Shown here one piece after another: positions 3,901-46,886 of a stretch of 64,000 bases of DNA. The stretch comes from Asterias rubens (lineage: Eukaryota). Numbering within the stretch: the stretch's first letter is position 1; each line of letters opens with the position of its first letter. The stretch is taken from assembly GCF_902459465.1 (NCBI RefSeq), contig NC_047063.1, positions 16,988,001 to 17,052,000 of the forward strand, in the 5' to 3' direction. The notes below the pieces were generated by a model that did no database searches, was not told the DNA's origin, and saw nothing but the letters and a program-made list of their open reading frames with translations. A program made the translations under genes and the position numbers.

Positions 3901-5195
3901 TGGTTTAACACTCAAATCGATGTGTGTTAGCACTGTATCATTTTTACTTTCCTGAGTTCTTCTGTGAATAAAAATCGCAGGCAAATAACTTGGTTGAGGT
4001 TCGAACCCACAACATTTGCAATTCTAGAGCAGTGTCTTCTGTGAACAAAAATTGCAGGCTAATTACTCGGTTGGGGTCAGTCTACCCGCAACCCATGCGT
4101 TTTAATGAGCTTTTGCCCGATTTTATCTGCAGTGCTTGGTGTGTTTTTTCATGTGTGACCTCGGTTCGAATACTAATTAGTGCAATGTAGCAGTACATTG
4201 AAGTAAAGAGCATATCTGTCGATTTGTATGAAACAAATCGGTGCAACTCAAATTTTAAAAAGAGAAATTTGTATTAAAAAAATGGCTTTAAAAAGAAAGA
4301 AAACAAGTCACAAAAACACGACAAATTGTCCTGGTTTGAATGTCAGCAACAGTCCCAAAAAAAAAATACAAGGATAGATTATTTAATATTCTTCCTTGAA
4401 ATGTTAAAAGCGAAACCGGATTGTACCTAGTCCAGTCAGGATACAGCGATTTCCACCAGTAGTCCAAAGCCACGTTACGAAAAAATCAACCATTAAACAG
4501 CATGGTTTTCCTGCACGGTGGTTGGCCGAGGATGGCACCATCCATAGCAGCTTGCTGTTTTTCTTGGGTTTGGTTCCCCCGACCGCCAGGCTAACGTTAG
4601 TCAATAACAAAAGTGCCTGGCTACTATGAGCTACTATATACATTTTGTAGTTCTTTCTGTATTTTCTGTATTTTCTGTATTCAATATTGCTGGTTACACT
4701 TGTTCACTTGAGACTTAATTGTTATTTTGCGCTATNNNNNNNNNNNNNNNNNNNNNNNNNNNNNNNNNNNNNNNNNNNNNNNNNNNNNNNNNNNNNNNNN
4801 NNNNNNNNNNNNNNNNNNNNNNNNNNNNNNNNNNNNNNNNNNNNNNNNNNNNNNNNNNNNNNNNNNNNNNNNNNNNNNNNNNNNNNNNNNNNNNNNNNNN
4901 NNNNNNNNNNNNNNNNNNNNNNNNNNNNNNNNNNNNNNNNNNNNNNNNNNNNNNNNNNNNNNNNNNNNNNNNNNNNNNNNNNNNNNNNNNNNNNNNNNNN
5001 NNNNNNNNGGTGTAGGGGGAGAGACTGGATGATGCACTGACTGAATCCGAAGTGAAGGTGTTTGTTGGTAGTGAGAAGTGTACAGTAGATGTCTTGGCAA
5101 ACTCCATCTTAACATGTACACCACCCAAGAATCAACCTCGACCCATAGACTTTAGAAGTAAAACAGAGACCAGTAACTTACTACCAACTGTATAT
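935..5195 (+). CDS. Plexin ectodomain IPT/TIG exons (4 exons)
   Basis: IVCHSANST...FTYQPNPTVSAIQPQKSVES|GGRLVNVTGVHF...|DCTMDTDTLMMCKTP...FTYVKDPVF...|GERLDDALTESEVKVFVGSEKCTV...LTCTPP are typical plexin IPT repeats. Confidence 0.9.
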
Positions 5196-20100: not shown

Positions 20101-23100
20101 TTTAATAAAAGGAGTAACAATGAAAGGTATTTCAAAGTGAATGATTAAGAAAGTTTTTATCATAAGTAAAGCATTATAGAAAGTTTGGCTGGGAAATATG
20201 CTTTTCTGATACAGGCAGTGGACACTATTGGTAATTACGCAAAGTAATTATTAGCATAAAACCTTACTTGGTAACGAGTAATGGGGAGAGGTTGATAGTA
20301 ACATTGTGAGAACAACTCCCTCTGAAGTGACACAGTTTTCGAGAAAGAAGTCATTTTCCATGAATTTGATTTCGAGACCTCAGATTTAGAATTTGAGGTC
20401 TCAAAATCAAGCACCTGAAAGCACACAACTTCATGTGACAAGGGTGTTTTTTCTTTCATTCTGATCTCGCAACTTCGACGACCAATTGAGCTCAAATTTT
20501 CACAGGTTTGTGTTTTTATGCATATGTTGAGATACACACCAAATGAGAAGACTGTCTTTTTCATTTACTATTAGTGTCCTCTGTCTTTAAAGCTCAATAT
20601 CAAATATTAAAATGTCCACAGATTTACACATGACTTACATTGTAAAAAGATTTAAAACCTCTTTTAACATATTTTTGCCCGACATGCTATATACTTTTGA
20701 TGCTTCTTGTTGCTCTCTTTTGTTCAGGTTTCTTGATGCTTCTTGTTGCTCTCTTTTGTTCAGGTTTCTTGATGCTGCTTGTTGCTCTCTTTTGTTCAGG
20801 TTTCTTGATGCTTCTTTTTGCTCTCTTTTGTTCAGGTTTCTTGATGCTTCTTGTTGCTCTCTTTGGTTCAGGTTTCTTGATGCTTCTTGTTCCTCTCTTT
20901 TGTTCAGGTTTCCGTTGCGTTTTTGGGTAAGCAGTATCACCCATCCAAACTACATCTTTGACATCCGACCTACACCATCTGTTGAGTCAAGCCTAGGGGT
21001 CGTAGGTCAAGCCTTCTATGATGCATGTAACAAATCTGACCATCAGCTTGGATGGGTAAGTAACTTTGTAAGATAAACATTTGTTTTAAATGAAAGCCCA
21101 TTTTGAAGTTTACAGTGAGAAGTACACTGATTTCATGATTTCAACATAATTTCAGGAGCTATAAAAAATAACAGTTTTGTGGTTCGCCCACTTTCTTCAT
21201 AACAAAAGTTGATAAAAAACAGACTGCAATCTCCATCAAATTTAAGATTTAATGACGTCTTCCATTGAGCTGTGTGCTAAAATCGTGCCTGCAGGCTGTA
21301 AAACCTGGCTCTGTGTCACTGCATGGAGGTAGATGGTCTCTGTAACTCTTTGTGCTCATTGCACGGGATATGCTTCAGGATATGAGATGACATTGGTAGG
21401 GATTTATTATAATAACAATATTAAAGTCTTATATAGCGCACGTAGCTACCAAACAAGGCTTAAGGCACTAAGTATATACAAACTTCCAGAAAGATAGGTT
21501 ACTACAGTGATGAATTCTGAGACCCAATTATTTAGCACCTTTAAAGGTTTTACAAGGTGCTACAACGCATTAAGCAGCCACAACGAGAAAAACCGGGGCG
21601 AACCCCTTCTCTTTCGATAAGTGCACTGGGTTCTGTTACATGCGTTACACAACACATTGGACCAACGGCTTTACGTCCCATCTGAAGGACGCAGCAATGT
21701 TTAAGTGTCTTGCTTTAGTACGCAAGTGTCACGGCTGGGGATTTGGGAGGGTATTCTTGGGTCAAGTGTCCTAACAATTTTGGCCCGGATTGTAAGTCTT
21801 TTTATGGTTTTAGTGGTTTACTGCTTGCTTGTTTATTTGTTTTATTATTATTATTATTTATTTATTTTTATTTTTTTCCCCCAGGAATCCTCAGTCAATA
21901 AGCTTTTGTATAACCGTGAAGTAACTAGATACCGTGGTCAGGTTGAGTCCTACTACCAAGGCATTGCAGACATGGAGAGGATTGAGACCAGCGACCTGCA
22001 GAGGGAGTTTGATAAGACGTGTCAGGTTAGTTCACAAAGAAATTTTGTTCCAAAATGAGATAATTTCATTTCAGGGACCTGTCTTATCCCTAGGGCCCAT
22101 TTCCATACTGCTTAATAGTGTTCTGCTTAGCAGAAATTAACTTGATACCAGTCACACATTTTACATATTGCATTTTGGTGGGTAATCCTTTTTTAAAGCT
22201 CCTTTTGTGCTTAAGCAGCTCTATAAAATTGGGCCCAGTTCTTTACGTTACCAGTTTAGAACCATTGTTTAGCTTGTTATGTTTGGTGTTTGTTTGGTTG
22301 TTTTATTTCCATTCATACTTTCATACATACAGATAAAAAATAACATATGAGCAATACAAAATGTATCATAAATTGTAGAACAATACAATACAGTATGAAT
22401 GGGGCTGACATACAGAGATGTACCATCTGCACCTGGCATCCTGCTCATTTGTTTTACTTTGCCGAGAATTGTTACGAAATATTCTGCCTGGTTTATTTGA
22501 TGAGATAAGTTGGTGTGATTAATTAGAGCAAACAAAACAAAAACACTTACTCATACACACTCATCAAGGCTTCGTTTTTAAGCAGCTGACTTTTAGTCTG
22601 TGATTTCCTTGTATTTAATCCACAGAACTTTACAGGTTTGTTCAGCAAACTCAGTACCTTGCTGCAGCTTTACGAGTTCACCAATCGCAACAAAGATTTG
22701 GTAAGTTCATCCTTCATTCTCCTTTCCCTTTGTTACTTTGCATTATTGGCTTATATTTATAGTCTTGGCATTTGGGTCTGAGGCAAGTTAGGCTTGAAGT
22801 CCAACAAAGTGATCATGAAAAGTAGAGCTTTAGATTGTTAAGTCCTCCAAAAATCAATGACCAATACAAACTTCTTGGTTGAGAAGCACTTCAACTGTTG
22901 ATAGTATAAACTATTTTGAGAAAGGATTCCCCTTCATGAAGTAATTAATATAAACACCAAAACTTATGAATCTGAGAAATTATTCATGCATGAATCATTT
23001 CTCAAATCTATCTTAAGATCTTAAATAAAAGGCACTTTGTATAATTAAAAAATAATAAATGCATCAGTGGTAAAGAATTATAATTTTGTTTATCCCTTAC

Positions 23101-32309: not shown

Positions 32310-32539
32310 CTACTGTCTGTGCCTAAGGCAACTTTCACAAATACAGATATCATGGACCTCAATAGACTTGATCTTTTGTACCATGCCGTCCAAAGGCTCG
32401 ACACAGCTGAAGGAATGATCTTCCATATGAGACGCTTCTACATCGCAGCCTGGAGGACAACGCATAACAGGGTTATCCAATGCACAGCCTGGCACGTGGG
32501 CAACGGGGTAAGGGATGACTGTTTCAATAGGGTTGCATC
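32310..32539 (-). CDS. C-terminal cystine-knot-like terminal exon
   Basis: GCNP...GCAL...CPPGC...SCV...IEVHDICICESC*: a C-x3-C and C-x-C ring plus terminal C..C, as in CTCK domains. Confidence 0.7.
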
Positions 32540-35500
32540 CTATGTCACACACACACACAAAAAGTGGAGGGAAATCATTATAACCAGGCATGATATTTTA
32601 CATTGAAAAGATTCAACGAATACAAAAAATCAGAACATATTAAAGTTGCGGGTTCAAACCAGCAGTTGAAATGAAAAACTTAAAAAGAAAACACATAGGC
32701 TAGGCCTTATAAATTCAGATTGAAATGTAAAATTTGATGACATCATTCACTCACATTTTGTTTTTGTAACGTGACAATACTGAATTTCTAGTTACATTCT
32801 GTAGTAATTACTATTCTGTAGTACTCACCACAGACCAAACATGGCCTCGATTGCGTCAGAGTTTGTAATCCACACCGCCTCCTTCTAATCTGAGAGCCAC
32901 GCCCGCACATTCTTTCCCCTTCAAGCTCACAGTCCAACCAGTCACCCCATTCCTCGGTGCATTCTTCTGAACTCTCATCTGCTGAAAGATGTGGTATATT
33001 TTTGATAACCGTCTCTCCAAACAAATATATTGACAAAATAGAGAGACCGCCCATAGTAGGGCTAGATTTGATAGCTAAGTTGGCAGAGCGCTGGCACATT
33101 AATAAAGAGTTCGCAGGTTCTAGTCCCACTCTAGTAAATTTGTCTTTGTTCAACCAAAGATTATGTTATAAGTGAGTAAAACTCTCCTACATTTTCAAGC
33201 AAGTTGACCATTTGAAACCATTCATTCAACTGCATCGGATGCGTACGGTGGAACACTGCTTTGGACCAACGTTGCACTCTTATCTGTGTCTGTGTGCACA
33301 GAGGCATTGCATGATGGTATGGTGCAGGGGATATTGGATTTCAGACAATGAGAAGTTTTGTTTTTTACACGAATATAATTTTAAAGCTTACTTTCTGTCT
33401 GACAGTCATTTTTGGTTGACTTTTTTTTTTAATCTTGCCTTGGTTCAGATCTACATAAAATAGGGTGGAAGTTGTCTCAGTATACTGCTCCTTTGTGGTA
33501 TATAATGCTTACTGTATTTGAATCAATAAAATCATTTCAGTATATCATTTAAAAATTTATCATCTGAAAAATTACATAAAATTGTTACTTATGCCTTACT
33601 CTCTTTTAATCAATGTAATGTAAAGCATTAATCAAGTGCCATTTTGGGCTCAATTTTAAAGAGCTACTTTAGCCGAATATTTAGCACAACAAAATTATGC
33701 TTTACCAAAATAAGGATTACCAATAAAATGTGACGTGTACAATCCGTGTCTGGTACCTTGCTTATTTTTGCTTAGCAAAATAAATTTAAGCACTCTAATT
33801 TTCTGCTTAAGCAGCTCTATGCAACGGAATCATGATGCTAATCTAACCACTACATACCTCTTGTGAATGCTTTCTCAATATGTGCTTTGCAGACGATATC
33901 CACAGATAAATCTTGCAGAAGTGAATTCCCCTCTGGGTTACGTGAAGATATAATCTACAAATAACAATAACAACTTCACAAAATAATTTAACTTCCAAGA
34001 AGTTTTTGGACAATTGAAAGCATTTTGCACAAATAATAGGTAGCCTAAAGGTCTGACGTCACACTTTCAAGGTGTGTGAATAATGCCAGATACCGGTTTA
34101 TAGAGCCTACTGGTGGCATGAACAGACGATTCATGTACATTTGACTCACTTAATTGTTCATGCATTTATGCTGTAGGCCCTAATGCTTGTATACTGTATT
34201 GGTCTTAGCACTATATAAATCCAGTTATGAGTATTATTATTGCATGTATAAGTCACTCTAATTAAACCATCTTTGGGTTTTCCTATGCTATAACACACCT
34301 AAAATGAACCTCCTTATGTCTTCTTTTCATGGGGTTCTTGGTTAGTATGGAGATTAAGTTCGCTTTCTTATCATTGCCTTCACAACCAGTAGAAATAAAT
34401 CAGCAAATAAACACTGCACTTGAAATTGTGTGCCGTGCTCAGAGAACAAAGAGAAAAACTAGCGGGTATGTTAGTGCTGCCAAATAGTGCCAGAAAGTCT
34501 CCATTAATGTGAACCGATTCTCACCTCAATTCTGACGGTATCATGCTCTGTCATTATCGGCCCAGTGTCATGAGTCTGGCATGGCTTAGGTAAGTAAAAC
34601 AAATTCTCCGCCTCCAGTACTCTGTTTAATGTGCTGATCTTCCCATGCATGAATACATTGGTAGAGTTCGGTAACGCATTGACTGTAGCCACTGAAGAAA
34701 CGTAAAAATAAAAAAAAAAGTCAAAAGGAAAATCAAATGTGCATGGCCGACTTAAGAGCACCGAACAACGAGCACCCTTATTCTAACTATGTGAGCGATA
34801 ATAACTGGTCATACAGTAGGAGGGTTGACTGTGTACTATGCATAATATGCATTCACCACCTGATATCATACAGGCTGAAAATAGTTTATTTAGCATTCGA
34901 AAACCACAGTGTGTGATATAAATGGTAACAAAGTAGAAGAGTCGACTGTACTATACTGTGTAGATGCACTCAACAATAATAATATCACACTGCAGACTGG
35001 CACAGTTGATCTATCAATTGCATATTTGCATAAGGCACAAAACCATCATCCAATTACTTGAACAGTAAAGCAATAGATACGATCTCTTGTTCATTTCTTG
35101 TAACTATAAACATTTTCTAGTGTCCATTGTACCCTAAATTGTTTTGTTTTTTATTTCTTGGCAATACTGACCCATTTGAGGTTCCATACAGACCCTACTA
35201 CATCCTTGGTAACAGCACATCTTAGTTCCAGGGCAAGCTGTATGGTAACTACACTCCTCAGTACACAGTGAATCCTCATCGTCAAGGTGGGGGCTTTTAG
35301 CTGGACATTCATCTATGAGTAAAATAAGCTCAATTAATGTCTACTACAGGGCCACAAGGTCACAAAGTAAGCAGCAAGGCCACAAAAGTGACAAGGGCGA
35401 ATTTCAGGGCAGCATAGATTCAAAACAGTCAACATTTTATGAAGACAAATCATTGCTACAAAATATTTGGAACTGTTGATATCATATTAGGTATTCTAGT

Positions 35501-38500
35501 TTAGACACAGTCCTACTTTAGATCGTATGTATTCTCGTTTAAATATTAAGCTGTAAACCACAAGGGAAACTGACTGAGTAAATAGACACAATACTTCTAT
35601 AGATCTCAGTCATTTAAGTTAACACAGTCGTACCTACATATCTCAGGTATTCTACTTTGGACACGGTCCTATTAACATATCCCAGGTGTTCTAGTTTATA
35701 CACAGACAGAAGCAACCACTTAGGGCATTGAACACTATGGTAATTACTCAAAATAATTGTTAGCTTAAGCACGTACTTGGTGAAGAGCAATCAAGAGCCG
35801 TTGACAGTATAAAACATTGTGAGAAACTGCTCCCTCTAAAAGTAACTTTTTTTGGAGAATTATTAAAGATTTCAGCTTAAGTATTTTATACTAATTTATG
35901 CATCTGAAAGCACACAAATTTGCGCAACAACGGTGTTTTTCTTTCATTATATTCATGCAACTTCGATGACCAAATTGAGTCCAATATTTAAGGGATTTGT
36001 TATTTTAGGCAAGTTGGCCACACCAAGTGAGAATACTGGTCTTTGACAATAATACCAAAGGTGTCCACTGTCTTTAAAGATCTCAAGTATTCTTTATAGT
36101 TATATAGACAAAAGTCGTGCTTACATATCTCGGGTATTCTCTGCTCTTCTAACAGCAGTTGTCCTTTGGATGCCACCAGTGACATTGTGACAAACTCATC
36201 CTCTCTGTATCTTCCCTCAATTCTCATCATATCCAGAGGAAGAAGTTGCATCTCAGAGATGCACACCTTGGTTGGCATCAGGAGAAGCGGCAACAGAGGG
36301 CGCTCACCGTTCACTACTTGAACATCCACTGTCAACCGCTTCATTGGGGGTGGTACGTCTTGGTACGAAAAAGAAAATTCAGGTAAAGCTTGAAAACCAA
36401 ATCGCAAAATTACAGAAAAAATGTTCTGCTCTCTGTTAAAGGAACACGTTGCCTTGGATCGGACGAGTTGGTCTATGAAAAGCGTTTGAAACAGTTTGTT
36501 ATGAAATGCATATGGTTAGAAAGATGTTTTAAAAGTAGAATATAATGATCCACACAAGTATCACTCAAAATTGCTCGGTTTTCCTTTTACGTCGCGAACT
36601 AACACGGTCGGCCATTTATGGGAGTCAAAGTTTTGACTCCCATAAATGGCCGACCGTGTTTGTCGACGAGGTAATACGAAAACCACGCAATTTCGAGGCA
36701 TATTTGTGTAGATCATTTTATTCTACTTTTACAACATCTTTCTAACCATATCAATTTTATAACAAACGGTTATAGGACGCTTTCAAAGACCAACTCGACC
36801 GATCCAAGGCAACGTGTTCCTTTAAGTTGGGGTGTCTTTTGTGCACTGATTACTATTTTATGGGTCTGGTCATTTTTTTTTTTAAAGAAGAAAACAAACT
36901 CGTAAACATCATTGAATTAATCTCCAGAACTATGAGATGAGAACCAAGGGGTGTATTTAGAAAGTGGTCCCCCCGTTTTCATTAAGACTTTATTGAAAAT
37001 GAGTGGATCACAAAATTGCAAATTACCTGGAAGCCCCCTCTTTAAAGTACATGTAAAGCATTTGTACCCCCGTTAAATGTTATAATGTTTTCAAACATCA
37101 CTTTAGCTGGACGCGCGCGATTAGCAACAATTGTTTTACTCCTTTCCTGATTTCCTAAAAGCATTTTAAAGAAAAAAATTCAAGCCAATTTCCCACCATG
37201 ACAATCTCAACAAAGTCATGTCGGAATATTATGTGAATTTTTTTTTGTGCAACCTTACCAAAGAAGAACACTAACCCAATCTAAATGTTTCTCTCATAGC
37301 CGTCGATGGTATCCTGTAGTCTACCTTCACCGAAGTCCGTCCTTTGAAATTCTTAAACGGAGTGAATGTAGCACTGAGCAGCGCCGCAATCACCATGTCA
37401 GCCGGACCAGCAATGCATAAATAGGTTGGTATCCTCTCATGTTGTCCAATGTGATCCATGTAGACACGTAGGCCGTCCTGGGTTGTGACGCTTACCAGAC
37501 CATGCTCGGCATAGATTTTGGCGTGAAGAATACCTAAACAGGAAATGTGCATGATTTTGTCTTCATGTAATTCCATGGGTAATTACTATATTAAAATGTA
37601 GTACACTTTAGTTCACGTGAAAGGAATCATTTTTAGAACTGCAAATTCCCAGGAAGACATTCCCAGTGAAAAAAAGTCAATGGGATTATATGGGATCCCA
37701 TTGAAAATTTGAATGGGATTAATGGGAATTCAATCGGATTGGTGTGGAAGTTCGATTGTCAGTTATTTTACTTTGACCTTAAAACACACATAATTATTTT
37801 CTGTTTGTGTATAAATTGTCTAATTTAAACTACAACGAGACGGGCACCAGACATTGCAGTCTCATTCTTACCAGATGGTGTCATACGTAACGATGAATAC
37901 GTTATACCCAGCGGAATGTTTGCTTCCCCCTGCCTGGCAATAACTGGTAGCTCAGGCGCTGCGATACTCATAGCCTGATCATGATGCATGTAGTTAATAC
38001 ACTCCGACACTGACTTATAACCCCACAGCATCATATAATCAGATAGTCTCTCCGAGTTGTCTTTATACATGCGGATCTGCCACAAAGTTCAAAACAAGTT
38101 GTGGGTTATAGTCAGGTAATTACAGAAAGGAAAATAAATGACAGCACTTTAATTATGGAATATTAGTAACAATATCTGCATAAAGTTTTGTAGCAACGAC
38201 AACTTCATCAGATTCAAGAAAAACAGCTTCCAATCTACCAAGGTTTATCAGTCCAGGGCAGTCGTAACAAAGGGTGGAAACAATGAAGTAGACATAATGT
38301 CAATCTTAGCATTACATCGTTCTTAGATAGTAGGCCTATCACAAAGTTTTACATAAACTTAACAATATTTTGCTAGAGTAGTTAGTGTTTAGTAATTGCC
38401 TTTTCTGTGCGCCTTAGACGTCTCTTGCATAGTTAAGGAGTTTTATAACTAATTTAATTTAAATGGTTTGACTAAAAACACTACCAAAAACACCTCCGAT

Positions 38501-41500
38501 CTTACCTCTATAGTTATCTTACAGACGTCTTGTACACTTACACCATCGCGCAGTGTGACTTCAATCTTCTGCAGTTTCTCTGTACATTCTGCGACGTTAC
38601 TGCACGAGAACGATGGCCTGTTCGTGCCTGTATTCCTTATAGTTGCAAGCTGGGGGAGAGAGAAATTCAATCGTCAAAATTCCTGACGTAACTTCGTAGT
38701 TCCAAATTGTGCAACTCAAGAAGTAAAATTGTCTCACCTCTTTCTCCACCACCTCAAGATCTATTCTGAGTTGGAAGAATTCTTCCTTGGATCGGATGTA
38801 GAGGTTTTTGACGAGGAAGGAGCGAGCATTGTCAGGGAAGTAGGTGAACAAGTTACTGCAAAGAAACAACACAAACCGCGGAATGTTAGGGAAAATGGGT
38901 AAGTAAAGAACATTTGTTTGTCCACGTGCCAATAAGGCTCATCAGGCACAGACCAGATATCCGATTTCCCTGGCATTAAACAACTAAGAATATTTCTATT
39001 CCGTGGCCTAGATAGGATGCCAGTCTATCGTAGGTTACTGTCCCAGCTCTCACTGGTACCCATTTGTACAACTGGGTGAAGAGAAGCAATTGTGATAAAG
39101 AGCATTGCTTATACAAGTGATACGACTCACCAGGTCAGGACCTAAACCCAAATTCTGTAAATTACAGATTTAAAGTCCATCGCCAAGACCGCTCAGCCAC
39201 GAAAAATAGGAAGCTGTCTGAAAATTAATCCCTTTTTTACATTGCAAAGAATTTGGAGATTTTGCCTATCACCAACAAGACCACTCTAACATGTTTAGCC
39301 GCTGTCAACATTGATATGCCTGGCCTGGTGTAAAAAGCAATTGGTTTATATCTGCAATGTCAAACCAGGTTTAATAATAATTAGTTCTCCCTAAAACATA
39401 CTTATTTTCGTTGTTTTTCTTCAATTTTTAAACTCCGGTTGTAAAGCCAATTGGATTCTTAAATAGTCGAACTCAATCTATATACTTTCTTAGAACCCCA
39501 TAAGAAGGAAAATTTCAGTTTGGGATGTAAGAGGAAAACCCCATAGAGTTTTTCTTTGAGAAAATCAACGAAATTAGGTAGGGACTAAAACAAACAATCC
39601 ACATAGTGCCCCAGCTGGATCTAGAGGTTGAGGGCGAGGGTATAGAGACCTACGCCAACCCGACCGTCTAGACAGCCAAGGAAAACTTCCTTACTCTGTG
39701 ATCAGACTCTTGGGCTCCGAGTGGCGCGTATTGACACGAACATCAGCAAACCAATGAGAGACGTCCGGTTGATCATCCTCGTTCTCTGCATCACATGTCT
39801 CTGGTGTTATTTCTTGGGTCTCAACGTGAATACGGCTCGTCCAATCAGAGCAGCTCTGATTCATCCACCATGGAGGCATGACTCGAGGCCACCAGGTCCA
39901 AGTCTTTCGCGGGAATGGATACCAGAAGCGAGGATACCTGGATTTGAAAAACATTTTAAAAAGTTAGTTCTGTGGGTATGAGGCTTTGCATGGTGGAGAT
40001 AAACACGAAGTCTTACATTTTTCGATGTAGGCCTGTCAAGCACACTGGACTCTATAGCTCTGGTGGCAGTGTCAGGTAGTTGCACATGAATTGCCAACCA
40101 TGCCAGAAACTACCAGAAACACCAGGGCCCAACTTCATAGTGCTGCTAAGCACAACAATTTGCTTAGCATGAATTTTCTTCTTTGATAAAAAAAAGGATA
40201 CCAGCCAAATTTTCACGTGATTTTGAGGATTTATAAGCAAACAACAGTTGAAAGTTGAATACCAGTAACATCAATATGCAACAAATGGAAATTTGGTTGG
40301 TAATGCTGTTTTTATTAAGGAAGAAATTTCATGCTAAGCAATTTTTTTTGTGCCGAGCAGCTCTATGATATTGGGCCCAGGGTAAACCCCGTCTCTTTAC
40401 GAAGAGTGCACTGGGTTCTTTTACATGAATAACACAACATAATAGGGGCTTTGCGTCCCATCTGAGGGATGAAGCAATAAAACTGTAAAGCGTCCTTGCC
40501 TAACAACACAAGTGTCAAGACCGGGACTCGAACCATACTCTGCTGATCAGAAACACCAGAGTTTGAGTCCGGTGCACTTGATGGCTCAGCGATGACGCAA
40601 ATAGCTTGACAGATGAATAATACATTTCTTAAGAAGATAAGCATAAAGTTGTGTAACTAACCATTGAGGCCAGATGGCAGGTTTCAACGGCTCATCACTC
40701 AACATTTGATCCAGGCTTGACGGGTCCATCCAAGATGATTCTGGTATGTTCCAGTTTGGAGGGGTCGGCCATTGTGGACACCAAGGCACAAACACCATAC
40801 TGGATAGGACTCGGTTAATACCATCCAGTGATCCTATAACAAAATCAAACAGTGATAAATCTTAAAAGTGTATTTCGGTTTGATGTTAAACCATGTCATC
40901 GACTTTCCTGTGTAGATTCGATCCTTAAGAATTTGTTTTTTATTATAATGTCGTCAAAATCGGGAGAGTACTTAATCAAAATAATGTTTAGCATAAAACG
41001 TACTTGAATGGTAACGAGCAATGGAGAGCTATTGATATTATATTAAAAAAAATGTGAGAAACAACTCCCTCTGAAGTAACGTAGAGTTAATTTCTCACTC
41101 AAATAATAAAATACTTCTGGCCTGAAGCTTTTCATTACTCTCGAGTCAAAATGTTCACAGATTTGTTATTTTATGCATATGTTGGGATACATCAAGTGAG
41201 AATAATGGTGTTTAACCATTACCAGAGGTGTCTTGTGCCTGTAACTACTATCTGTGATGGGGGGGGGGGGGGTTAGGAAATCGGCGAGGTTAATCAGATG
41301 ATCTAGAATCAAGAGGGAAAACTCACCAACAAACATCAGGTTTTTCTTCCCGTTGTTTCTTGACTGCTCGTCATCAGGAGCTTCATAGTGTTCATAGAAG
41401 TTTTCAAAGCGATCCAGCTGTTCATATTCTCTCAGATTATCTATAGGTTCCCACTCCGGACTACCGGATTCCTATCAAGAAAAATTACAATTCTCGCCAA

Positions 41501-44500
41501 CTTGATCAAAATGCTGTAATGTTTCTCATCTGTACACGTCAGAGATTCCGACATTTGCATCTTATACAATCAGGGATATTTTACAACATTAGGGGAAATA
41601 TGTAGATTTACATTCTACATTTTCATAATCCATGAGATTTTAAAATCTGTTCATCAGAACATAATATAAAAAGGTTGCCTTAATTTGTTTAGGGAACTTT
41701 CTGCAGAACCAGTGCGAGTTGGCAGCTTTGGTGTTCATGTGTATTCCAATGTTTTTTTTCTCCCCACTCGAGTAAGTTTTTCAAGAAGATGCTATAGTTT
41801 GAAAATCTTAACCATAAACATCTTCTAAGAGAGGAAATAAATTCGTTTAGTGTTGGCCTATAGTGACCCATATCCTTGAGACATTATGTCTTTGCTTAAC
41901 AAAGACTAGCAACGTGGCCTTCATCATAATGCATTTCCAAGCTTTTGTAAAAGTCTTGGATGTGATATGCGTTGAACAAATAGAAATGAACTGTGGAGCA
42001 CAAAGCGCGAAAGCTTGCGTTTAAAAAGTCCTCATCTGCAAACATGCGGTGGGCGTTCTATAATGGTTCTATCTTCATATTTCATCAATTTGATTTAAAA
42101 TAATAAAAAAATTATATTTATATTAAAAAGAAAAATGGCGGGGGTTCGAACAAAACGGATTCCTAGAAAACAAAGAGATACCGCAAAAAAGAGAATATCA
42201 CAACACTAAACAGCCTTCTTAAAAAAAATTGTTTTTGACACCTTTGGATAGAAAATGACGTTTGAATTCTCATCTTGTTTTACACTCAGCATGCCTCCAT
42301 GGTCCACTGAAACCTTAACACGGTACATTCCTTCGGTGGAGTCACTATCCCGTATCCGCAAACCGCCGAACTGAATGACCTGTCCCTCACTGGTCTCCAA
42401 CTGCAGCTGCGGTTCATGGGCCTCTCGACCCGGCACGGTGGTTTGGGAGGACGTAGCGGTGATGTTGATGCGGAGTCTACGCTGGACGTACGAGACGGGC
42501 TGAGGTTGCAGGTGGAGGTTCCAGTGGACAGCGTGTACATCAAGACAAAGCAATCCATGACTGTGCATTTGGGTTCTGCAAAAACACATCGATGTATACA
42601 ACTTCATTCTCAAACATTCATGGACACTACTAGTGGTTATGAAAGTGGTAAGTGGCATACTAGAAAACTACCGTTCATCACACATGATGCATGTGTTGGT
42701 TAATTTTTATTTTTTTTAAATTGGGGGAAACAAAATGTGTAAATGTCTTTGTTCAACCATTACTTGATGGTTGTTTCACAAACTTGGGTGTGAGAGTGGC
42801 AGTCAGAGAATGAATTCTGACTGGCACCCCTAAAAAGGATATGGAAAAAATAGAGGGAGACTACCACAAACATAGGGCTAGATAGAGCGCCCTGCCTGGT
42901 TACAGGTTCAAATCCCGCTCTATCCAATTTGTCTTAGTTTAACTGAAACATAAGTTTAAACAAAATGAGATGACATTCGGCACCTACTTCAAGGTGAGGT
43001 TGAGATGAGAGGCGTCCAAGTCGTTCAGCTCATCGTTTTCATACCGTCGCTGTATTCCATCGGCTAGTACCCATCCAGTCGGCAGGGTCAATAGGCACGC
43101 GCATCTTGCTAGACATACATGATAATGATATTATTTAGTGAAGCATTATATGGTGCCAAACGAAGATAAATGAGAGTGCATCCTAGCTATGAGTCTAAAA
43201 TGGTGGTTAGGATGGAAGTGAGGATTAGGAAATTTCAAATACTACTGGCAAGAAAGTTTTGATTTGTAGTTTTTTTATTTCCAAATATCACAATAAATAA
43301 TCATAAAACATACAAGACAAAGAACAAAGGGTGATAAGAGGAGGGCACCAGGAAAAAGCCTAGGCTTGTACAGAGCCTGGACCCTTTATAATATAAATTA
43401 ATTGGTTTTAGTTTATAACAATAACAATGTTGATTGATGAAATAAAAGTACAGTGAAAGGTATAATGCATACAGCAACAAATAACACAAAACAATGTTTG
43501 TTTGTAATTAAACTGTTTTACACAATTTGTTTGCTATGCAGCCTTAAATACATATTGAGAGTTGATAACAAAAAGGAAAATTAACAGGAACATAATTACT
43601 TAAAAAATTACAAAACTAGATAAACTGGAATGGATAATCATGGTAAGCGTGTAGTCGTTTTAAACATACTAGTTATAAGTAGGTTTTTCAAGTATTTTTT
43701 GAAGCTGTGCACAGTTCTAAATGAAGGTATTGGGGTGTTCGATGTAGCAGCTTATCATTGTTTCGTTTCGGATATTTCAGTAATATTTGTTGATATGATA
43801 ATAATTGCATCTTACCCGAATCCTCGTTACACTCCAACGCCTGATTGCAGTTGCACAATGAAACCTTCAGACTAGCTCCACCATTGCTGTCTGATGCACC
43901 TAGGGAAGCCTGGACCCCGAGAGGCACGTAGGTACCCTCCACTGAGGTGATATTGCGAACCTCCAACAGCGGAAGGCTGGGGTTACTCCTAATGTTGATG
44001 GTGACCTTGGCTGGAAGGCTAGCCCTTCCTTGGCTATCTGAGACCAGATAGTAGAACGTGGTTATGCCATCAATGTCACCAGCTGGCCTGTAGAAACAAA
44101 ATTAAGCATAATGTTTTATAGGGTCGATAAGATTGTGTCATACACATTGGTTGTTATCACTGATACTGATTTTATAGTTTGTTCTATAGCATTTTAGTGT
44201 TTTTGTCTGCACTGTTTGAATCAAGGCAGTTTTAGTTTTCCCAGTACGGGATATAAAGTTCTTATATTATTTTACAGATCACTTTATCATTAGTCAGATA
44301 CAATGTCATTTGTGAATTTTGTTGCTGATTACAGCGACTATACTTGTGTCTACAAATATATAACTTTTCTTCAAGAACGATGAATGTACAGCCAATTACT
44401 TTCTTGGGGGAAATTAACATTCAAAAGGTTAACCCCTAGATTTATCTTTGGGCAGAATTTTCTGGCAGTTTTCCCTCAAAGCTTTCCTGGAAAGTGTATC

Positions 44501-46886
44501 TTAAAATTGGGCTCATGATGGGCAGACTTACTCGTAGATGAATTCACCGGTACTGGAGTTCAGAAGTCTTACTCCACGTCTCAAATTTTCATTCAGGATC
44601 TCATATTGTAGATTCTCATCAAGTTCGGCACCGACGGGAGGGCAAGCCTTGAGTACACCGTAGAGGGCGTGTTTGGTATCTATCTTGTATGACTGGCTGA
44701 CTGCTTGATATCTATGCACATCAGCTGAGGTAAAGACAACAAACATGGCCGACGGGAGATAAAATACAAAAAAAGTACCTTAGGATTTTTGAACAGTTCG
44801 AATGTTTTAATGCTATATAAATGTAGATGTACACTAAAACTACCCTGTGAACATTTCATTTTCATCTGTAGTGGCTATGTTTGTCCACACTGGACGAATA
44901 ATCCGTAAATGAAATACACACACTGAGAAATATTTCATGCATAAAACTGTTCTCAGATTGATTTATTTAAAAAATTCCTTTCTCTAAAACCACATTCCTT
45001 AGGCCTATATAGAGGAAGATAATTTCTCAAAATGTTAAACATTGTCCACAGCCTTCTTACTTACTAAGTAAATTGTTATAGTCATCATTAAAAATTAAAG
45101 TAATTTCGATCACTTGTCAGACCCTCTAACGAGAGGTCCTCCTTTGCCTCATTAGCCATGATCATGCAATTATTGTTGCTAATTTTTGAATCTCTTCTTT
45201 TTTCTTTATTTTTCTTTCTTCAATCACTCGTGGCACAGCTGCTGCAAAACTTAAGATGTTGTCTTCTTTATAGTTTTTGTTTTTGATTTTGTAAGCTAAT
45301 TCATGTGATATTTTATGCTTGTTGATGTTCTGGTTGTCATTGTTATTTAAATCCATTTTCTTTTCAGATAAATCTAAACCTCTGCAATACTCTGTTAAAT
45401 ATATTTGTTACTAAGTGACTTATAAGTTGACATAAATCTGATCTCTCGCCTCCTTGGGCAAAAGTCCAGCAATTGTCTAAGGTATCTTATCATGATATCA
45501 TGAAAGATATGATTTGTAAAGTGAACATTTTAACAACCACTTATTTGGTAAATTTAAAGGTAGGCCTATTATACAGAATTGGGATACAAAAATGATTATT
45601 TAGGTCTAGTTTGAAAGCTTATTATGTGATTATAAAGTTTGTGCTAAAAACCCTTTTTTCTGTGAAATGATTTTCTCTATGAAATAAAATCTTATCGAGA
45701 AAACTATCTGAAAACCTATTAAACAAAAACCTCAATAGCTAAAAAATAAATTTATGTTGATACATAACAACATGAAAAGCACTTGACCTTATTTGTTACC
45801 TTCATGAAAAAAAGAACAAATGTACCTTGTGCTTCTGCTTTCCTAATAATAATGCGTTTAATCTTTCCAGATTCAACAACAGTGAGTATCATTGACAGCA
45901 GTTGGCAACATTTCAAAAACTTAAACAAGTGAATTGTTTCGAGTGACAAGAAGGAAAAACATTATAAGAAGGAAACACGTTAATAGCAGAAGGAACAAAC
46001 ATTTGGCAGAAGGACGTAATATCTGGTAGGGTAGCCTGCTGTAAAATGTTACATTGAATTGGCAACGTTCCCAAAACTAAAGGCTCACTTGGGGAGAGCT
46101 TCTGCCTGTTGTCAAGAAGAAATTCAAGCTTTTAATAAATATCCCGGGGCTACTTTTGAAAACCCCTCCTCAACACTCGTATCTATATTTACATTATTTG
46201 CTGAAGTTGAATTTGAATGGTTCTAATAGTATCCGCCTGCACAGTACTTAAGCAGCATGCAGCATCATAGTCCAGCTTTATCCAGAAGACGATTACAGTA
46301 TACTGTGATCGAAACGTCGAGTTGAAACCAACGGTTCTTTTCAGAACCACCCCAACTCATTAGAGATAGTCATTACATGGTGTTACCGCAAACCTTTCTA
46401 TATAGTATTAGAGAGGCACCCACACCCAGGCACCCACAAGAAATAATTGGGTTAAAATTGCCATCGGGGATAATGAATACTATTTGGTTTTGCCCAAAAT
46501 ACGATGTGTGTAAATCACTTAATAGACCTACTCAGTAGGCCTACTTTCCCCCTGTGATTTTAGTTTTTTAAATCCACGGCATATTACTCGAGTGGGATTC
46601 GAACCCGCGATTTCTGCCATTCTACAGCAGATGCCAGTTCGAATTCTTGCGGCAAAGTAAGATTATTTCGCAAGATTTCAGAGAATGATGCCAAATTATT
46701 AGTTAGAGGCCATCATTTGCAACAGTCAATATACATAATTGCAGCATTCAATTCAAAACCAGTAAAAACAAGAAACCACTTTCTCTTTCAAACCAAAAAC
46801 AAGTTTATCAACTCACATTTGCAAACAGTAGCAGACGAAAAAGCTGCCCAGCTCAAAATCAGAGCGAAGTATCCAAGTGACTTCAT
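32310..46886 (-). CDS. Secreted multidomain protein, ~1096 aa: signal peptide, cadherin-like/Big_9-like repeats, WAP, TSP1, C-terminal cystine knot
   Basis: 18 GT-AG exons, all phase-compatible with no internal stop (3291 nt): 46886-46817, 44724-44532, 44087-43816, 43108-42988, 42575-42242, 41471-41327, 40833-40662, 39937-39695, 38855-38738, 38649-38542, 38076-37872, 37533-37276, 36388-36125, 35312-35172, 34691-34525, 33954-33858, 32981-32829, 32539-32310 (TAG). Domain names come from motif recognition, not an HMM search. Confidence 0.88.
32829..32981 (-). CDS. Thrombospondin type-1 repeat exon (phase 1-1)
   Basis: EEWGDWLDCE...CGRGSQIRRRRC...QSRPC shows the W..W..C, CG.G.Q.R.R.C TSP1 signature. 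Confidence 0.88.
35172..35312 (-). CDS. WAP four-disulfide-core exon (phase 1-1)
   Basis: ECPAK...CTEECSYHTACPGTKMCCYQGCSRVCMEP has 8 Cys in canonical WAP spacing (CP...C...C.....C.....CC...C...C). Confidence 0.9.
36436..36825. mobile_element. TTAA-flanked MITE family C (TIR TTAAAGGAACACGTTGCCTTGGATCGG) with central palindrome
   Basis: Long TIRs; second copy at 56619-56969 and a left-end fragment at ~54197-54300. Confidence 0.88.
40124..40380. mobile_element. GGGCCC-terminal MITE family
   Basis: agggcccaacttcatagtgctgct ... gcagctctatgatattgggccc; related copies at ~53465-53712, 53878-54126, 22090-22237. Confidence 0.8.
43816..44724 (-). CDS. Big_9/cadherin-like Ig repeat 1 and start of repeat 2
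   Basis: LQYEILNENLRRGVRLLNSSTGEFIYEPAGDIDGITTFYYLVSDSQGRASLPAKVTINI follows the pattern (L.Y.I....G.FTYTP..G..SFTY.VSD....ATVTI.V) of bacterial tandem Ig-like repeats. Confidence 0.7.
46281..46321 (+). ncRNA. Minimal hammerhead-ribozyme-like motif in a Penelope-type repeat fragment
   Basis: TC-CAGAAGA-C-GATTACAG(TATA)CTGTGATC-GAAAC-GTC-GA: core, stem II, GAAA and GUC cleavage triplet, but CAGA instead of CUGA. Homologous copy at 28006-28045 (-). Confidence 0.5.
46817..46886 (-). CDS. Signal-peptide exon MKSLGYFALILSWAAFSSATVCK
   Basis: ATG at 46886, basic N-terminus, hydrophobic core, small-residue cleavage region (SSA-T); phase-1 gtgagt donor matches the phase-1 acceptor at 44724. Confidence 0.85.

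What the first reader, a model, noticed from the sequence alone, without database searches (positions are those of the whole stretch)
32310..46886. Intron-rich secreted protein built on bacterial-adhesin-like repeats, decorated with animal modules
Seen: 18 phase-consistent exons give one ~1096-aa ORF with a signal peptide and no TM. It has a Big_9-like repeat (GEFIYEP...FYYLVSDSQG...AKVTINI) and at least three repeats with the motif [V/L]xV.HG.L.V...[LMV]..G...IN..L...F.P (FVGSLDGINRVLSSMVFVP; IAGPADMVIAALLSATFTP; MHGKISTLNRVLEAENLFYLP). Known: this resembles the LTLTGTLADINAAL..LTYTP repeat of large bacterial surface adhesins, while WAP, TSP1 and CTCK are animal exon-shuffled modules. Inference: a possibly lineage-specific extracellular scaffold (adhesive, mucus or antimicrobial), perhaps from an old, since intronised, bacterial acquisition. 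I do not recognise this architecture from any named family.
Basis: partly seen in the sequence, partly recalled or inferred. Interest (0 to 1): 0.85.

Follow-up and report, generated by a model that had tools for sequence, protein, structure and literature searches.

The report
Uncharacterised starfish secreted protein, microbe-like repeats
This is a real 18-exon starfish gene for a secreted protein that echinoderms, acorn worms and amphioxus share but nobody has studied; its core domains most resemble surface-adhesin repeats of bacteria and marine protists, and ordinary animal modules were added later.

Summary
**Observation: confirmed.** On the minus strand, 18 GT-AG exons (46886 to 32310) give one 1097-aa ORF with an N-terminal signal-like segment and no membrane span. 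The window is Asterias rubens LOC117302698. The RefSeq model there lacks exons 1-4.

**Orthologues.** They exist in four starfish, two sea urchins, a brittle star (a 156-aa fragment), Saccoglossus and Branchiostoma. All are "uncharacterized". All 17 introns keep position and phase in the sea urchin. Most boundaries coincide in Saccoglossus.

**Domains.**
- Domain 1 is a Big_9/tandem-95 domain.
- Domains 3 and 5 match a profile of bacterial adhesin repeats (hhalign E about 1e-6). Domain 6 matches only weakly.
- The confident domain-5 model matches bacterial Cadherin_4/Big_9 folds at TM 0.73.
- No Pfam match to classical cadherin or CSPG repeats was found.
- WAP is a phase 1-1 exon placed in echinoderms where Saccoglossus has a single phase-1 intron.
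- TSP1 is recognisable but below the Pfam threshold.
- The CTCK label is not confirmed by any profile.
- The best-conserved part is a Trp/Pro-rich loop, 74% identical between starfish and amphioxus.

**Origin.** Bacterial acquisition is possible but not shown, because protists carry related domains.

**Gaps.** RNA splice junctions could not be checked. The scan's only other notes on this gene are on this same window.

The parts
46817..46886 (-). Exon 1: start codon and signal-peptide-like N-terminus (aa 1-24); ends in phase 1
   Evidence: Donor AAT|GTGAGT. Model assembled. Conserved as a signal-like N-terminus in all full-length orthologues.
44532..44724 (-). Exon 2: first half of domain 1 (Big_9/tandem-95 beta-sandwich)
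   Evidence: tblastn to P0001 is 52% identical. Pfam Big_9 scores 30.9 bits in P0001 at residues 63-115.
43816..44087 (-). Exon 3: end of domain 1 (FYYLVSDSQG...AKVTINI) and start of domain 2
   Evidence: Pfam Big_9 E 0.018 and Cadherin_5 E 0.097 on this piece. NCBIfam tandem-95 E 2e-7 on P0025 residues 62-124.
42988..43108 (-). Exon 4: Cys-containing middle of domain 2
   Evidence: Conserved Cys pattern in the alignment.
42242..42575 (-). Exon 5: end of domain 2 and first strands of domain 3 (LRIRDSDS...VKVSVDHGGMLSV)
   Evidence: RNA-type runs hold 0.24-0.36 of its 31-mers. hhalign of D3 against the bacterial repeat profile gives E 4.6e-7. The RefSeq A. rubens model starts at an ATG I place at about 42607 in intron 4, just upstream.
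41327..41471 (-). Exon 6: acidic, poorly conserved loop inside domain 3
   Evidence: pLDDT below 50 for residues 328-371. Identity to other phyla is 26-28%.
40662..40833 (-). Exon 7: domain-3 strand-helix-strand motif (FVGSLDGINRVLSSMVFVP) and first half of the Trp/Pro-rich insert
   Evidence: 75% identical to Acanthaster. Helix 380-388 in the model. Aligned to the bacterial G..IN.AL.GL.FTP motif.
39695..39937 (-). Exon 8: core of the Trp/Pro-rich insert (YPRFWYPFP..WTWWPRV.PPWW) and last strands of domain 3
   Evidence: The core (residues 432-470) is 74% identical to both sea urchin and amphioxus, against 14-46% for the folded domains. It holds 13 Trp and 15 Pro in 80 residues and two WxxW motifs. 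pLDDT is below 50.
38738..38855 (-). Exon 9: domain 4, first part
   Evidence: Model pLDDT 70-89 over residues 510-640.
38506..38649 (-). Exon 10: domain 4, helix-bearing part (AECTEKLQKIEV)
   Evidence: No sequence match to the bacterial profile.
37872..38076 (-). Exon 11: end of domain 4 and start of domain 5
37276..37533 (-). Exon 12: core of domain 5 (HGLVSV...IAGPADMVIAALLSATFTPFKNFKG)
   Evidence: phmmer query. hhalign against the bacterial repeat profile gives probability 89%, E 2.3e-6, 75 columns. AF2 model of D5: pLDDT 86.8, pTM 0.82.
36125..36358 (-). Exon 13: end of domain 5 and first strands of domain 6
   Evidence: The acceptor at 36358 agrees with the gap-free match to RefSeq P0022.
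35172..35312 (-). Exon 14: WAP four-disulfide-core module, a symmetric phase 1-1 exon of 141 nt inserted in a loop of domain 6
   Evidence: Pfam WAP 32 bits against a 20.8 cut-off. Eight Cys at 839-878. The module is absent from Saccoglossus and Branchiostoma. Saccoglossus has one phase-1 intron at this place.
34525..34691 (-). Exon 15: domain 6 strand-helix-strand motif (MHGKISTLNRVLEAENLFYLP)
   Evidence: Helix 901-909. hhalign of D6 without WAP against the bacterial profile gives E 0.0076 over 93 collinear columns.
33858..33954 (-). Exon 16: last strands of domain 6
32829..32978 (-). Exon 17: TSP1-like module, a symmetric phase 1-1 exon of 150 nt, with a NAGNAG alternative acceptor at 32981
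   Evidence: Pfam TSP_1 15.2 bits against a 21.6 cut-off, and 21.1 bits in Saccoglossus. WGDWLDC and CGRGSQIRRRRC motifs. The X1/X2 isoforms differ by one residue here.
32310..32539 (-). Exon 18: Cys-rich C-terminal module (cystine-knot-like, unconfirmed) and stop codon
   Evidence: Ten invariant Cys in alignment A5, the first belonging to TSP1, which leaves nine in this module. They include C-x3-C and C-x-C-x2-C. No Pfam or PDB sequence match.

Best explanation
This is the complete Asterias rubens copy of an undescribed, conserved gene for a secreted extracellular protein. The gene is found in invertebrate deuterostomes.

Shown. A signal-like N-terminus is followed by about six beta-sandwich domains. 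Domain 1 is a Big_9/tandem-95 domain. Domains 3, 5 and, weakly, 6 belong to a helix-bearing variant of the same superfamily. That variant is otherwise seen in giant bacterial adhesins and in protist proteins. The variable loops of these domains carry lineage-specific insertions: an acidic loop, a very strongly conserved Trp/Pro-rich segment in domain 3, and in echinoderms a WAP module in domain 6. The WAP exon lies where Saccoglossus has a single phase-1 intron. The tail is a TSP1-like module followed by a nine-Cys module.

Inferred mechanism. The protein acts as an elongated extracellular matrix or mucus scaffold. The odd-numbered Cys tail would link two chains covalently, as cystine-knot tails do in mucins and von Willebrand factor. 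The sandwich array acts as a spacer and, by analogy with bacterial cadherin-like lectins, may bind glycans or calcium. The Trp/Pro-rich loop is the likely ligand-binding core, because it is the most constrained part. The WAP module adds protease-inhibitor or antimicrobial activity in echinoderms.

The origin of the core repeats, whether by transfer from a marine microbe or by old eukaryotic inheritance with losses, is left open.
For: Gene model and identity.

Orthologues in three deuterostome phyla, all unnamed.

Intron conservation: all 17 introns have the same phase and the same or near-same alignment column in S. purpuratus (16 within two columns, one six columns away), and most boundaries coincide in Saccoglossus.

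WAP: a 1-1 exon where Saccoglossus has one phase-1 intron, with Pfam WAP at 32 bits.

Homology of the core domains:
- Big_9 above threshold in two orthologues and tandem-95 at E 2e-9.
- phmmer of exon 12 hits bacterial repeat proteins at E 5e-12 to 8e-5 in a 1.84-billion-protein library.
- hhalign of D5 gives E 2.3e-6 and of D3 gives E 4.6e-7 against the bacterial repeat profile A4.
- The D5 model (pLDDT 86.8) matches bacterial Cadherin_4/Big_9 clusters at TM 0.73, rmsd 2.8 Å. It also matches RTX, DUF4347 and outer-membrane-adhesin entries at TM 0.6-0.72.

Secretion: no membrane span, and 41 Cys.

Trp/Pro core: 74% identical between starfish and amphioxus.

Tail: nine conserved Cys belong to the tail module (ten invariant in A5, the first in TSP1), with C-x3-C and C-x-C spacing.

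Expression: RNA-type runs hold 0.24-0.36 of exon-5 words, against 0.14-0.23 for a stretch that is 38% exon.
Against: - No functional or localisation data were found.
Transcript support therefore rests on conservation and on RefSeq models.
- The full-length model is poor (pLDDT 59.6). The Trp/Pro loop and the tail are at low confidence.
- The cystine-knot reading, and so the dimer, has no profile support.
- TSP1 is below the Pfam threshold in this species.
- Calcium-binding motifs of the bacterial repeats (D.D, NDAP) are kept only in part: RDSDS is present in D3 and nothing comparable in D5.
- D4 has no sequence match to anything.
- The D3 match needed removal of two insert regions chosen after seeing the model. 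With the inserts left in, only a 27-column core matches, at E 6.8e-5.
Confidence: 0.6

Rival explanations
1. The core repeat block entered the stem-deuterostome genome by horizontal transfer from a marine bacterium or micro-alga. It then gained introns and animal modules, and was later lost in vertebrates and tunicates.
For: - Outside the orthologues, the only sequence hits in 1.84 billion proteins are microbial Big_9/Cadherin_4/5 repeat proteins.
- No Pfam match to animal cadherin or CSPG repeats.
- Domain-level fold matches are mostly bacterial or protist; the few animal-protein rows are weaker.
- The gene was found only in deuterostomes.
- Simakov et al. 2015 (PMC4729200) describe more than a dozen deuterostome genes with relatives only in marine microbes.
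Against: - Identity to the bacterial repeats is 17-27%, with no close donor.
- Related domains occur in diatoms, oomycetes and euglenozoans, so old eukaryotic ancestry is equally possible.
- The whole-chain fold search also returns CSPG4 and FREM.
- Seventeen introns were already fixed before echinoids and asteroids split, and most before the hemichordate split.
- The searches for other animals were limited: one exon by phmmer, and word-index searches with length limits.
Confidence: 0.25
2. The repeats descend vertically from an ancient eukaryotic or animal cadherin-like domain stock, the same clan as the CSPG/FREM and Big_9 domains. They look bacterial only because Pfam models and databases are dominated by bacterial sequences.
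For: - Whole-protein Foldseek hits include mouse CSPG4 (E 2e-20) and a FRAS1-related protein.
- ESM feature hits include Cadherin_3 clusters at 0.85-0.88 and eukaryotic Cadherin_4/Big_9 clusters at 0.89-0.91.
- The bacterial protein P0010 itself matches Cadherin_3 at E 1e-23, which shows that these families overlap.
Against: - No Cadherin_3 or Cadherin Pfam hit at E up to 0.1 in any orthologue.
- CSPG4 is absent from the 30 listed (best) domain-level D5 matches.
- TM scores of the whole-chain matches are about 0.1.
- No other animal protein was found by phmmer.
Confidence: 0.4
3. The protein is mainly an innate-immune or antimicrobial effector. The Trp/Pro/Arg-rich loop would act like indolicidin or tritrpticin peptides after release, and the WAP module would act as an antimicrobial or antiprotease unit.
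For: - The loop is rich in W, P and R (13 W and 15 P in 80 residues).
- The WAP module is confirmed.
- An earlier first-reader note (s1-151170) makes the same comparison.
Against: - The loop is 74% identical from starfish to amphioxus. That points to a structural or binding constraint rather than an arms-race peptide.
- WAP is absent from hemichordate and amphioxus orthologues, so it cannot be the ancestral function.
- No processing sites were examined.
Confidence: 0.12
4. The 18-exon model is an artefact that joins two neighbouring genes: a repeat protein and a small WAP/TSP1/Cys-rich protein.
For: Read-level junction evidence is missing. The RefSeq A. rubens model differs at the 5' end.
Against: - The same collinear architecture is predicted in eight species.
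- Domain 6 continues on both sides of the WAP exon.
- All intron phases fit one frame.
- The gap-free match to RefSeq P0022 spans exons 5-18.
Confidence: 0.03

Closest known systems
Bacterial tandem-95 / Big_9 / Cadherin_4 repeat adhesins (RTX-type, DUF4347-type and outer-membrane adhesin-like giants)
   Same: Domain 1 passes the Big_9 threshold in orthologues. Domains 3 and 5 align to the repeat unit with the I.V.D.D ... G.L.L ... G..IN.AL.GL.FTP..NF.G pattern. The fold agrees at TM 0.7.
   Different: - Only about six very divergent domains, not tens of near-identical tandem copies.
- Large loop insertions.
- Calcium-binding linker motifs mostly lost.
- A spliced animal gene with a signal-peptide-like N-terminus, and WAP, TSP1 and Cys-rich modules.
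- No RTX or type I secretion signal.
CSPG4 (NG2) and FRAS1/FREM matrix proteins (CSPG repeats, Pfam Cadherin_3)
   Same: Secreted or surface animal proteins built of cadherin-like beta-sandwich repeats of the same clan. They appear in the whole-chain fold search.
   Different: - No Cadherin_3 profile hit.
- Absent from the 30 listed (best) D5 domain-level matches.
- No Calx-beta, laminin-G or transmembrane parts.
- A different repeat motif.
C-terminal TSP1 plus cystine-knot tails of CCN proteins, SCO-spondin and gel-forming mucins
   Same: The order is a TSP1-like module followed by a terminal Cys-rich module ending C-x-C-x2-C. The Cys count is odd, which is compatible with covalent dimerisation.
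   Different: - No Pfam Cys_knot hit and no PDB sequence hit.
- No IGFBP, VWC or VWD modules.
- The ring motif reads C-P-x-G-C instead of C-x-G-x-C.
RapA2-type cadherin-like (CHDL) calcium-dependent lectins of Rhizobium
   Same: An entry annotated 'RapA2 cadherin-like domain-containing protein' is rank 4 in the whole-chain AlphaFold DB search. From my own knowledge, RapA2 binds polysaccharide, which suggests glycan binding as a function.
   Different: The TM score is only about 0.12. No binding residues were compared. RapA2 has two domains and no animal modules.
Deuterostome gene novelties with relatives only in marine microbes (Simakov et al. 2015, PMC4729200)
   Same: The same phylogenetic pattern: ambulacrarians plus a chordate, with the nearest outside relatives being microbial.
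   Different: The gene is not named in the main text, and the supplement is not held. On the chordate side only amphioxus was found here. Similarity to microbial sequences is at domain level only.

Membership tests
Big_9 / tandem-95 repeat (Pfam PF17963, NCBIfam NF012211) | Profile match above the curated Pfam domain threshold | tested here: met
   Domain 1 scores 30.9 bits in Acanthaster and 26.1 in Branchiostoma against a 23.6 cut-off. The window's exon-3 piece alone scores 16.4 bits, because the domain is split by an intron. The sea urchin scores 20.2, below the cut-off.
Big_9 / tandem-95 repeat (Pfam PF17963, NCBIfam NF012211) | Array of many tandem ~95-aa repeats (NCBIfam whole-protein cut-off of 90 bits) | tested here: not met
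   Only one stretch matches, at 30.9-37.2 bits. The other domains are found only by profile-profile comparison or by fold.
Big_9 / tandem-95 repeat (Pfam PF17963, NCBIfam NF012211) | Cadherin-like beta-sandwich fold | tested here: met
   The D5 model (pLDDT 86.8) matches bacterial Cadherin_4/Big_9 cluster representatives at TM 0.73, rmsd 2.8 Å, over 125 of 141 residues.
Big_9 / tandem-95 repeat (Pfam PF17963, NCBIfam NF012211) | Acidic calcium-binding motifs (D.D in strand 1, NDAP linker) | tested here: inconclusive
   D36 and D38 are invariant in the bacterial units. D3 keeps RDSDS. D5 and D6 do not, and no NDAP linkers were seen.
WAP four-disulfide core (PF00095) | Profile above threshold and eight Cys in the canonical spacing | tested here: met
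   32 bits against a 20.8 cut-off on exon 14. Cys at 839, 853, 857, 863, 869, 870, 874 and 878.
Thrombospondin type 1 repeat (PF00090) | Profile above threshold | tested here: not met
   15.2 bits against 21.6 in the window, and 21.1 bits in Saccoglossus.
Thrombospondin type 1 repeat (PF00090) | WxxW(xxC) motif, CGxGxxxRxR motif and six Cys | tested here: met
   WGDWLDC and CGRGSQIRRRRC are present. Cys at 978, 988, 996, 1007, 1018 and 1021.
C-terminal cystine knot (CTCK; Pfam Cys_knot PF00007, SMART CT) | Profile match | tested here: not met
   No family at E up to 10 for any of seven orthologue tails. No PDB sequence hit below E 0.4.
C-terminal cystine knot (CTCK; Pfam Cys_knot PF00007, SMART CT) | Eight-membered ring from C-x3-C and C-x-C with a threading disulfide | tested here: inconclusive
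   The spacing fits (C-P-x-G-C and C-x-C-x2-C, all invariant). The tail is at pLDDT 44-60, and no separate model could be made.
CSPG repeat proteins (FRAS1/FREM/CSPG4; Pfam Cadherin_3 PF16184) | Cadherin_3 profile match | tested here: not met
   No hit at E up to 0.1 in P0001, P0017, P0006 or P0005. There is only whole-chain fold resemblance at TM about 0.1.
Classical cadherins (PF00028) | Cadherin profile match and a transmembrane anchor | tested here: not met
   No PF00028 hit. No membrane span.
CCN family | IGFBP and VWC modules before TSP1 and CT | tested here: not met
   No IGFBP or VWC Pfam hits in any orthologue.

The most novel reading that the evidence does not exclude
A stem deuterostome captured a block of tandem-95/Cadherin_4 adhesin repeats from a marine microbe. 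The block became intron-rich before the Ambulacraria split. It gained a unique, near-invariant Trp/Pro-rich binding loop plus TSP1 and cystine-knot modules (and WAP in echinoderms). It was then lost in vertebrates and tunicates. This would be an adhesin-derived matrix protein that helped the mucociliary, filter-feeding life of early deuterostomes.
Probability: 0.2. Interest if true: 0.7.

Novelty: new variant of a known kind. Interest (0 to 1): 0.45.

Why it matters
- It defines an unstudied protein family kept for over half a billion years in echinoderms, hemichordates and amphioxus, and apparently lost in vertebrates.
- Its constituent domain type is otherwise known from microbial surface adhesins.
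- It offers a clean case of module insertion: a phase 1-1 WAP exon sitting where the hemichordate orthologue has a single phase-1 intron, inside a folded domain.
- It presents an extremely conserved Trp/Pro-rich loop of unknown function that can be tested directly.
- It corrects the RefSeq A. rubens model, which lacks the signal peptide and the first four exons.
- If the microbial origin were shown, it would add a structural matrix protein to the published list of deuterostome genes with microbial relatives.

Tried and rejected
- **Pfam on single exon pieces.** Only weak Big_9, WAP and TSP1 hits.
- **ESM atlas on an exon piece with intron flanks.** Noise.
- **Internal repeat detection by hhalign between the six domains.** Not significant apart from short helix-motif matches, and D1-D3 at E 3e-4. 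The repeats are therefore better shown through the bacterial profile.
- **PDB sequence search with D5 and tail profiles.** Nothing.
- **PDB fold searches with D5.** Only generic sandwiches such as cohesins and pilins. The best was a B4GALNT1 domain at Z 10.4.
- **Whole-protein Foldseek.** Generic multi-sandwich chains at TM about 0.1.
- **Word-index protein searches** with the full orthologue, with the alignment and with the Trp/Pro region. Only echinoderm orthologues plus a few bacterial repeat proteins.
- **Literature searches for gene and protein ids.** Zero papers.
- **Supplement of Simakov 2015.** Not held.
- **Branchiostoma locus.** Could not be fetched.
- **My impression that domain 2 is a T1SS-143-type DGSE repeat.** Not supported by NCBIfam or hhalign (E 0.048).
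- **Rejected: a membrane span at residue 711.** It is the strand-helix of folded domain 5.

Full report
**1. What is in the window**

The minus strand between 46886 and 32310 carries stop-free pieces that line up collinearly with a 1093-aa Acanthaster planci protein, P0001. I obtained P0001 by searching the exon-12 piece against 1.84 billion representative proteins.

I refined each junction for GT/AG sites, frame consistency and best alignment to P0001. This gave 18 exons and a single 1097-aa open frame.

- Two junctions were ambiguous on sequence alone. The acceptor of exon 13 is settled by the gap-free match to RefSeq A. rubens XP_033642590.1 (P0022) over 879 residues.
- The acceptor of exon 17 is a NAGNAG pair (32981/32978). 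It corresponds to the one-residue difference between annotated isoforms of A. amurensis.
- The window is therefore Asterias rubens.
- The RefSeq model for this species begins at an ATG inside intron 4, which I place at about 42607 by counting from the frame. It lacks exons 1-4, that is, the signal peptide, domain 1 and half of domain 2.
- The A. amurensis model P0025 (1097 aa, 96.9% identical) has them.

**2. Is the gene real?**

Orthologues with the same collinear architecture are annotated in these species:

| Group | Species |
|---|---|
| Starfish | A. amurensis, Acanthaster planci, Patiria miniata |
| Sea urchins | Strongylocentrotus purpuratus, Diadema antillarum |
| Brittle star | Amphiura filiformis (a 156-aa fragment only) |
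| Hemichordate | Saccoglossus kowalevskii |
| Amphioxus | Branchiostoma lanceolatum, as the two ends of a model fused with transferrin domains |

All are called "uncharacterized". No paper in the held library cites their gene or protein ids.

I fetched the sea urchin and acorn worm loci and mapped their exons.

- All 17 A. rubens introns recur in S. purpuratus with the same phase. Sixteen fall within two alignment columns and one is six columns away. The sea urchin has one extra intron.
- The Saccoglossus exon boundaries fall in the same alignment zones, wherever the assembly has no gap.
- So the intron-rich structure predates the echinoderm classes, and largely predates the echinoderm-hemichordate split.

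Direct read evidence for the junctions could not be obtained. RNA-type runs hold 0.24-0.36 of the 31-mers of exon 5. They hold 0.14-0.23 of a 1.9-kb stretch that is 38% exon. This is compatible with low-level expression but is weak evidence.

**3. Anatomy**

The N-terminus looks like a signal peptide. The only other hydrophobic window lies inside folded domain 5.

The full-length AlphaFold2 model is mediocre (pLDDT 59.6), but it shows a chain of beta-sandwich domains. Domain numbering follows the P0025 sequence.

| Part | Residues | What it is | Evidence |
|---|---|---|---|
| Domain 1 | 25-122 | Big_9/tandem-95 domain | 30.9 and 26.1 bits in two orthologues against a 23.6 cut-off; NCBIfam tandem-95 E 2e-7 to 2e-9 |
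| Domain 2 | 123-268 | Cys-containing sandwich | No profile match |

Domain 5 was modelled alone from ten orthologous sequences and is confident (pLDDT 86.8, pTM 0.82).

Three loops carry insertions.

- An acidic, variable loop in domain 3, encoded by exon 6.
- A Trp/Pro-rich segment in domain 3, encoded by exons 7-8.
- The WAP module in domain 6, encoded by exon 14.

**4. The repeats and bacteria**

The phmmer search of exon 12 found 15 proteins at E up to 0.001.

- Most are this gene's own relatives: six orthologues or orthologue-like fragments by my note at the time, plus the Amphiura fragment P0014 (34.8% identical). P0015 also aligns with the model (50% over 42 residues), but its source is an unnamed metagenome protein.
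- Seven hits (P0007-P0013) are the ones I examined further. The five scanned with Pfam are Big_9/Cadherin_4/Cadherin_5 repeat giants or carry such domains. P0013 matches NCBIfam tandem-95. P0012 shows the same multi-repeat match but was not scanned. P0011 is named as coming from an Azospirillaceae MAG. These hits have up to ten matched stretches each.

One of them, P0013, aligns over about 75 residues with domain 5, including the G..SINQALNGLIFTP.NFNG motif.

I cut eleven repeat units out of two bacterial proteins and aligned them. Profile-profile comparison against this alignment gave the results below.

| Domain | Result against the bacterial repeat profile |
|---|---|
| D5 | Probability 89%, E 2.3e-6, 75 columns |
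| D3, inserts removed | Probability 92.6%, E 4.6e-7, 81 columns |
| D3, inserts kept | E 6.8e-5 for a 27-column core |
| D6, WAP removed | E 0.0076 over 93 collinear columns |
| D1 | E 7e-4 for its C-terminal strands |
| D4 | Nothing |

The D5 model was compared with three structure libraries.

- **ESM Atlas:** the best matches are bacterial Cadherin_4/Big_9 clusters (TM 0.73, rmsd 2.8 Å).
- **AlphaFold DB clusters:** the best matches are entries named RTX toxins, DUF4347, cadherin-like and outer-membrane adhesin-like, plus several protist proteins (TM 0.6-0.72).
- **Solved structures:** only generic sandwich matches. The best is a domain of human B4GALNT1 at Z 10.4.

No orthologue hits Pfam Cadherin (PF00028) or Cadherin_3 (the CSPG repeat) at E up to 0.1. 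The whole-chain fold search does list CSPG4 and a FREM-like protein, but at TM about 0.1.

That test is not met at sequence level. All these families belong to one broad cadherin-like clan, however.

**5. Animal modules**

- **WAP.** It is solid (32 bits, eight Cys). Its exon is a symmetric phase 1-1 exon of 141 nt. The module is missing from Saccoglossus and Branchiostoma. At that exact place Saccoglossus has a single phase-1 intron. This fits insertion of the WAP exon into an existing intron in the echinoderm lineage, in the middle of a folded domain.
- **TSP1.** It also sits on a 1-1 exon and shows the canonical Trp and CGxGxxxRxR motifs. It stays below the Pfam threshold here.
- **C-terminal module.** Alignment A5 has ten invariant Cys. 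The first belongs to TSP1, which leaves nine in this module. The spacing (C-x3-C, C-x-C-x2-C) fits a cystine knot, but no profile or PDB sequence match exists. I treat "CTCK" as unconfirmed.

**6. The Trp/Pro-rich loop**

Residues 397-466 hold 13 Trp and 15 Pro within 80 residues and two WxxW motifs.

Its core is 74% identical between starfish and both sea urchin and amphioxus. The folded domains are 14-46% identical.

The loop is modelled at low confidence. A search for this region in proteins of similar length found only the echinoderm orthologues.

This loop is the most constrained part of the protein, so I take it as the likely functional centre. What it binds is unknown. It does not fit the deep conservation.

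**7. Mechanism**

I infer an elongated secreted matrix or mucus scaffold. It would be tail-linked by the Cys-rich module. The sandwich array would serve as a spacer and possible glycan or calcium binder, and the Trp/Pro loop as the binding core. Echinoderms have an added WAP activity. The architecture, secretion signal and homologies are shown. Dimerisation, ligand and tissue are inferred.

**8. Origin**

The outside relatives are microbial, and the gene was found only in deuterostomes. This matches the class of "deuterostome novelties with relatives in marine microbes" of Simakov et al. 2015 (PMC4729200).

Three points argue for caution.

- Identities are low.
- No donor stands out.
- The language-model feature search places diatom, oomycete and euglenozoan Cadherin_4/Big_9 clusters as near as bacterial ones.

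I put horizontal transfer at about one in four.

**9. Surroundings**

A plexin gene lies on the plus strand upstream. Plexin_cytopl exons are at 20612-21076 and 21705-22058. The two genes are therefore tail to tail. No other Pfam-recognisable ORF was found between 22 and 32 kb or between 47 and 64 kb.

**10. Verdict**

This is an undescribed but annotated, deeply conserved family. Its architecture is a new variant of the modular secreted-protein theme. It is of moderate interest. It would be of higher interest if a microbial origin or a function for the Trp/Pro loop were established.

Noticed in passing
window 42575-42610 (intron 4 / exon 5 boundary): RefSeq A. rubens XP_033642590.1 (889 aa) starts at an ATG inside intron 4, which I place at about 42607. 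It reads through the exon-5 acceptor, so it lacks the signal peptide, domain 1 and half of domain 2. Exons 1-4 are intact in the window and match the A. amurensis 1097-aa model.
   Followed up: yes
window 32978-32983: A tandem NAGNAG acceptor (CAG|CAG) at exon 17 gives 1097- and 1098-aa forms. The same one-residue difference separates isoforms X1 and X2 of A. amurensis. The two Acanthaster isoforms also differ by one residue in length, though I did not locate that difference.
   Followed up: partly
P0006 (Branchiostoma lanceolatum CAH1266116.1, named LTF): The amphioxus model joins this family's N-terminal 230 residues and its remaining 950 residues around four transferrin domains. This is probably a nested transferrin gene or an annotation fusion. 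The locus could not be fetched.
   Followed up: partly
L002 about 7900-12080 (Saccoglossus locus): The locus holds 3152 N letters, and between these two places no exon matches P0023. An assembly gap there would explain why the Saccoglossus protein model lacks the part matching exons 6-7. I did not locate the N letters, and the gap was left unfilled.
   Followed up: no
L001 5145-5669 (S. purpuratus locus): The sea urchin gene has one extra phase-2 intron (after aa 268) that splits the equivalent of A. rubens exon 5.
   Followed up: yes
window 20612-22058, plus strand: Plexin cytoplasmic RasGAP-domain exons (Pfam E 6e-14 and 5e-9). A plexin gene lies tail to tail with the gene studied.
   Followed up: partly
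window 4736-5008: A run of 273 N (assembly gap or masked stretch). Left as it is.
   Followed up: no
window 34704-34739: read laying refuses this stretch (intron 14, just upstream of exon 15) because of a filter. This blocked the only read-laying run.
   Followed up: no
D5 model against PDB 9h6j_A residues 141-257: The best solved-structure match of domain 5 is a beta-sandwich domain of human B4GALNT1 (Z 10.4, rmsd 3.0 Å, 110 residues). Its meaning is unknown.
   Followed up: no
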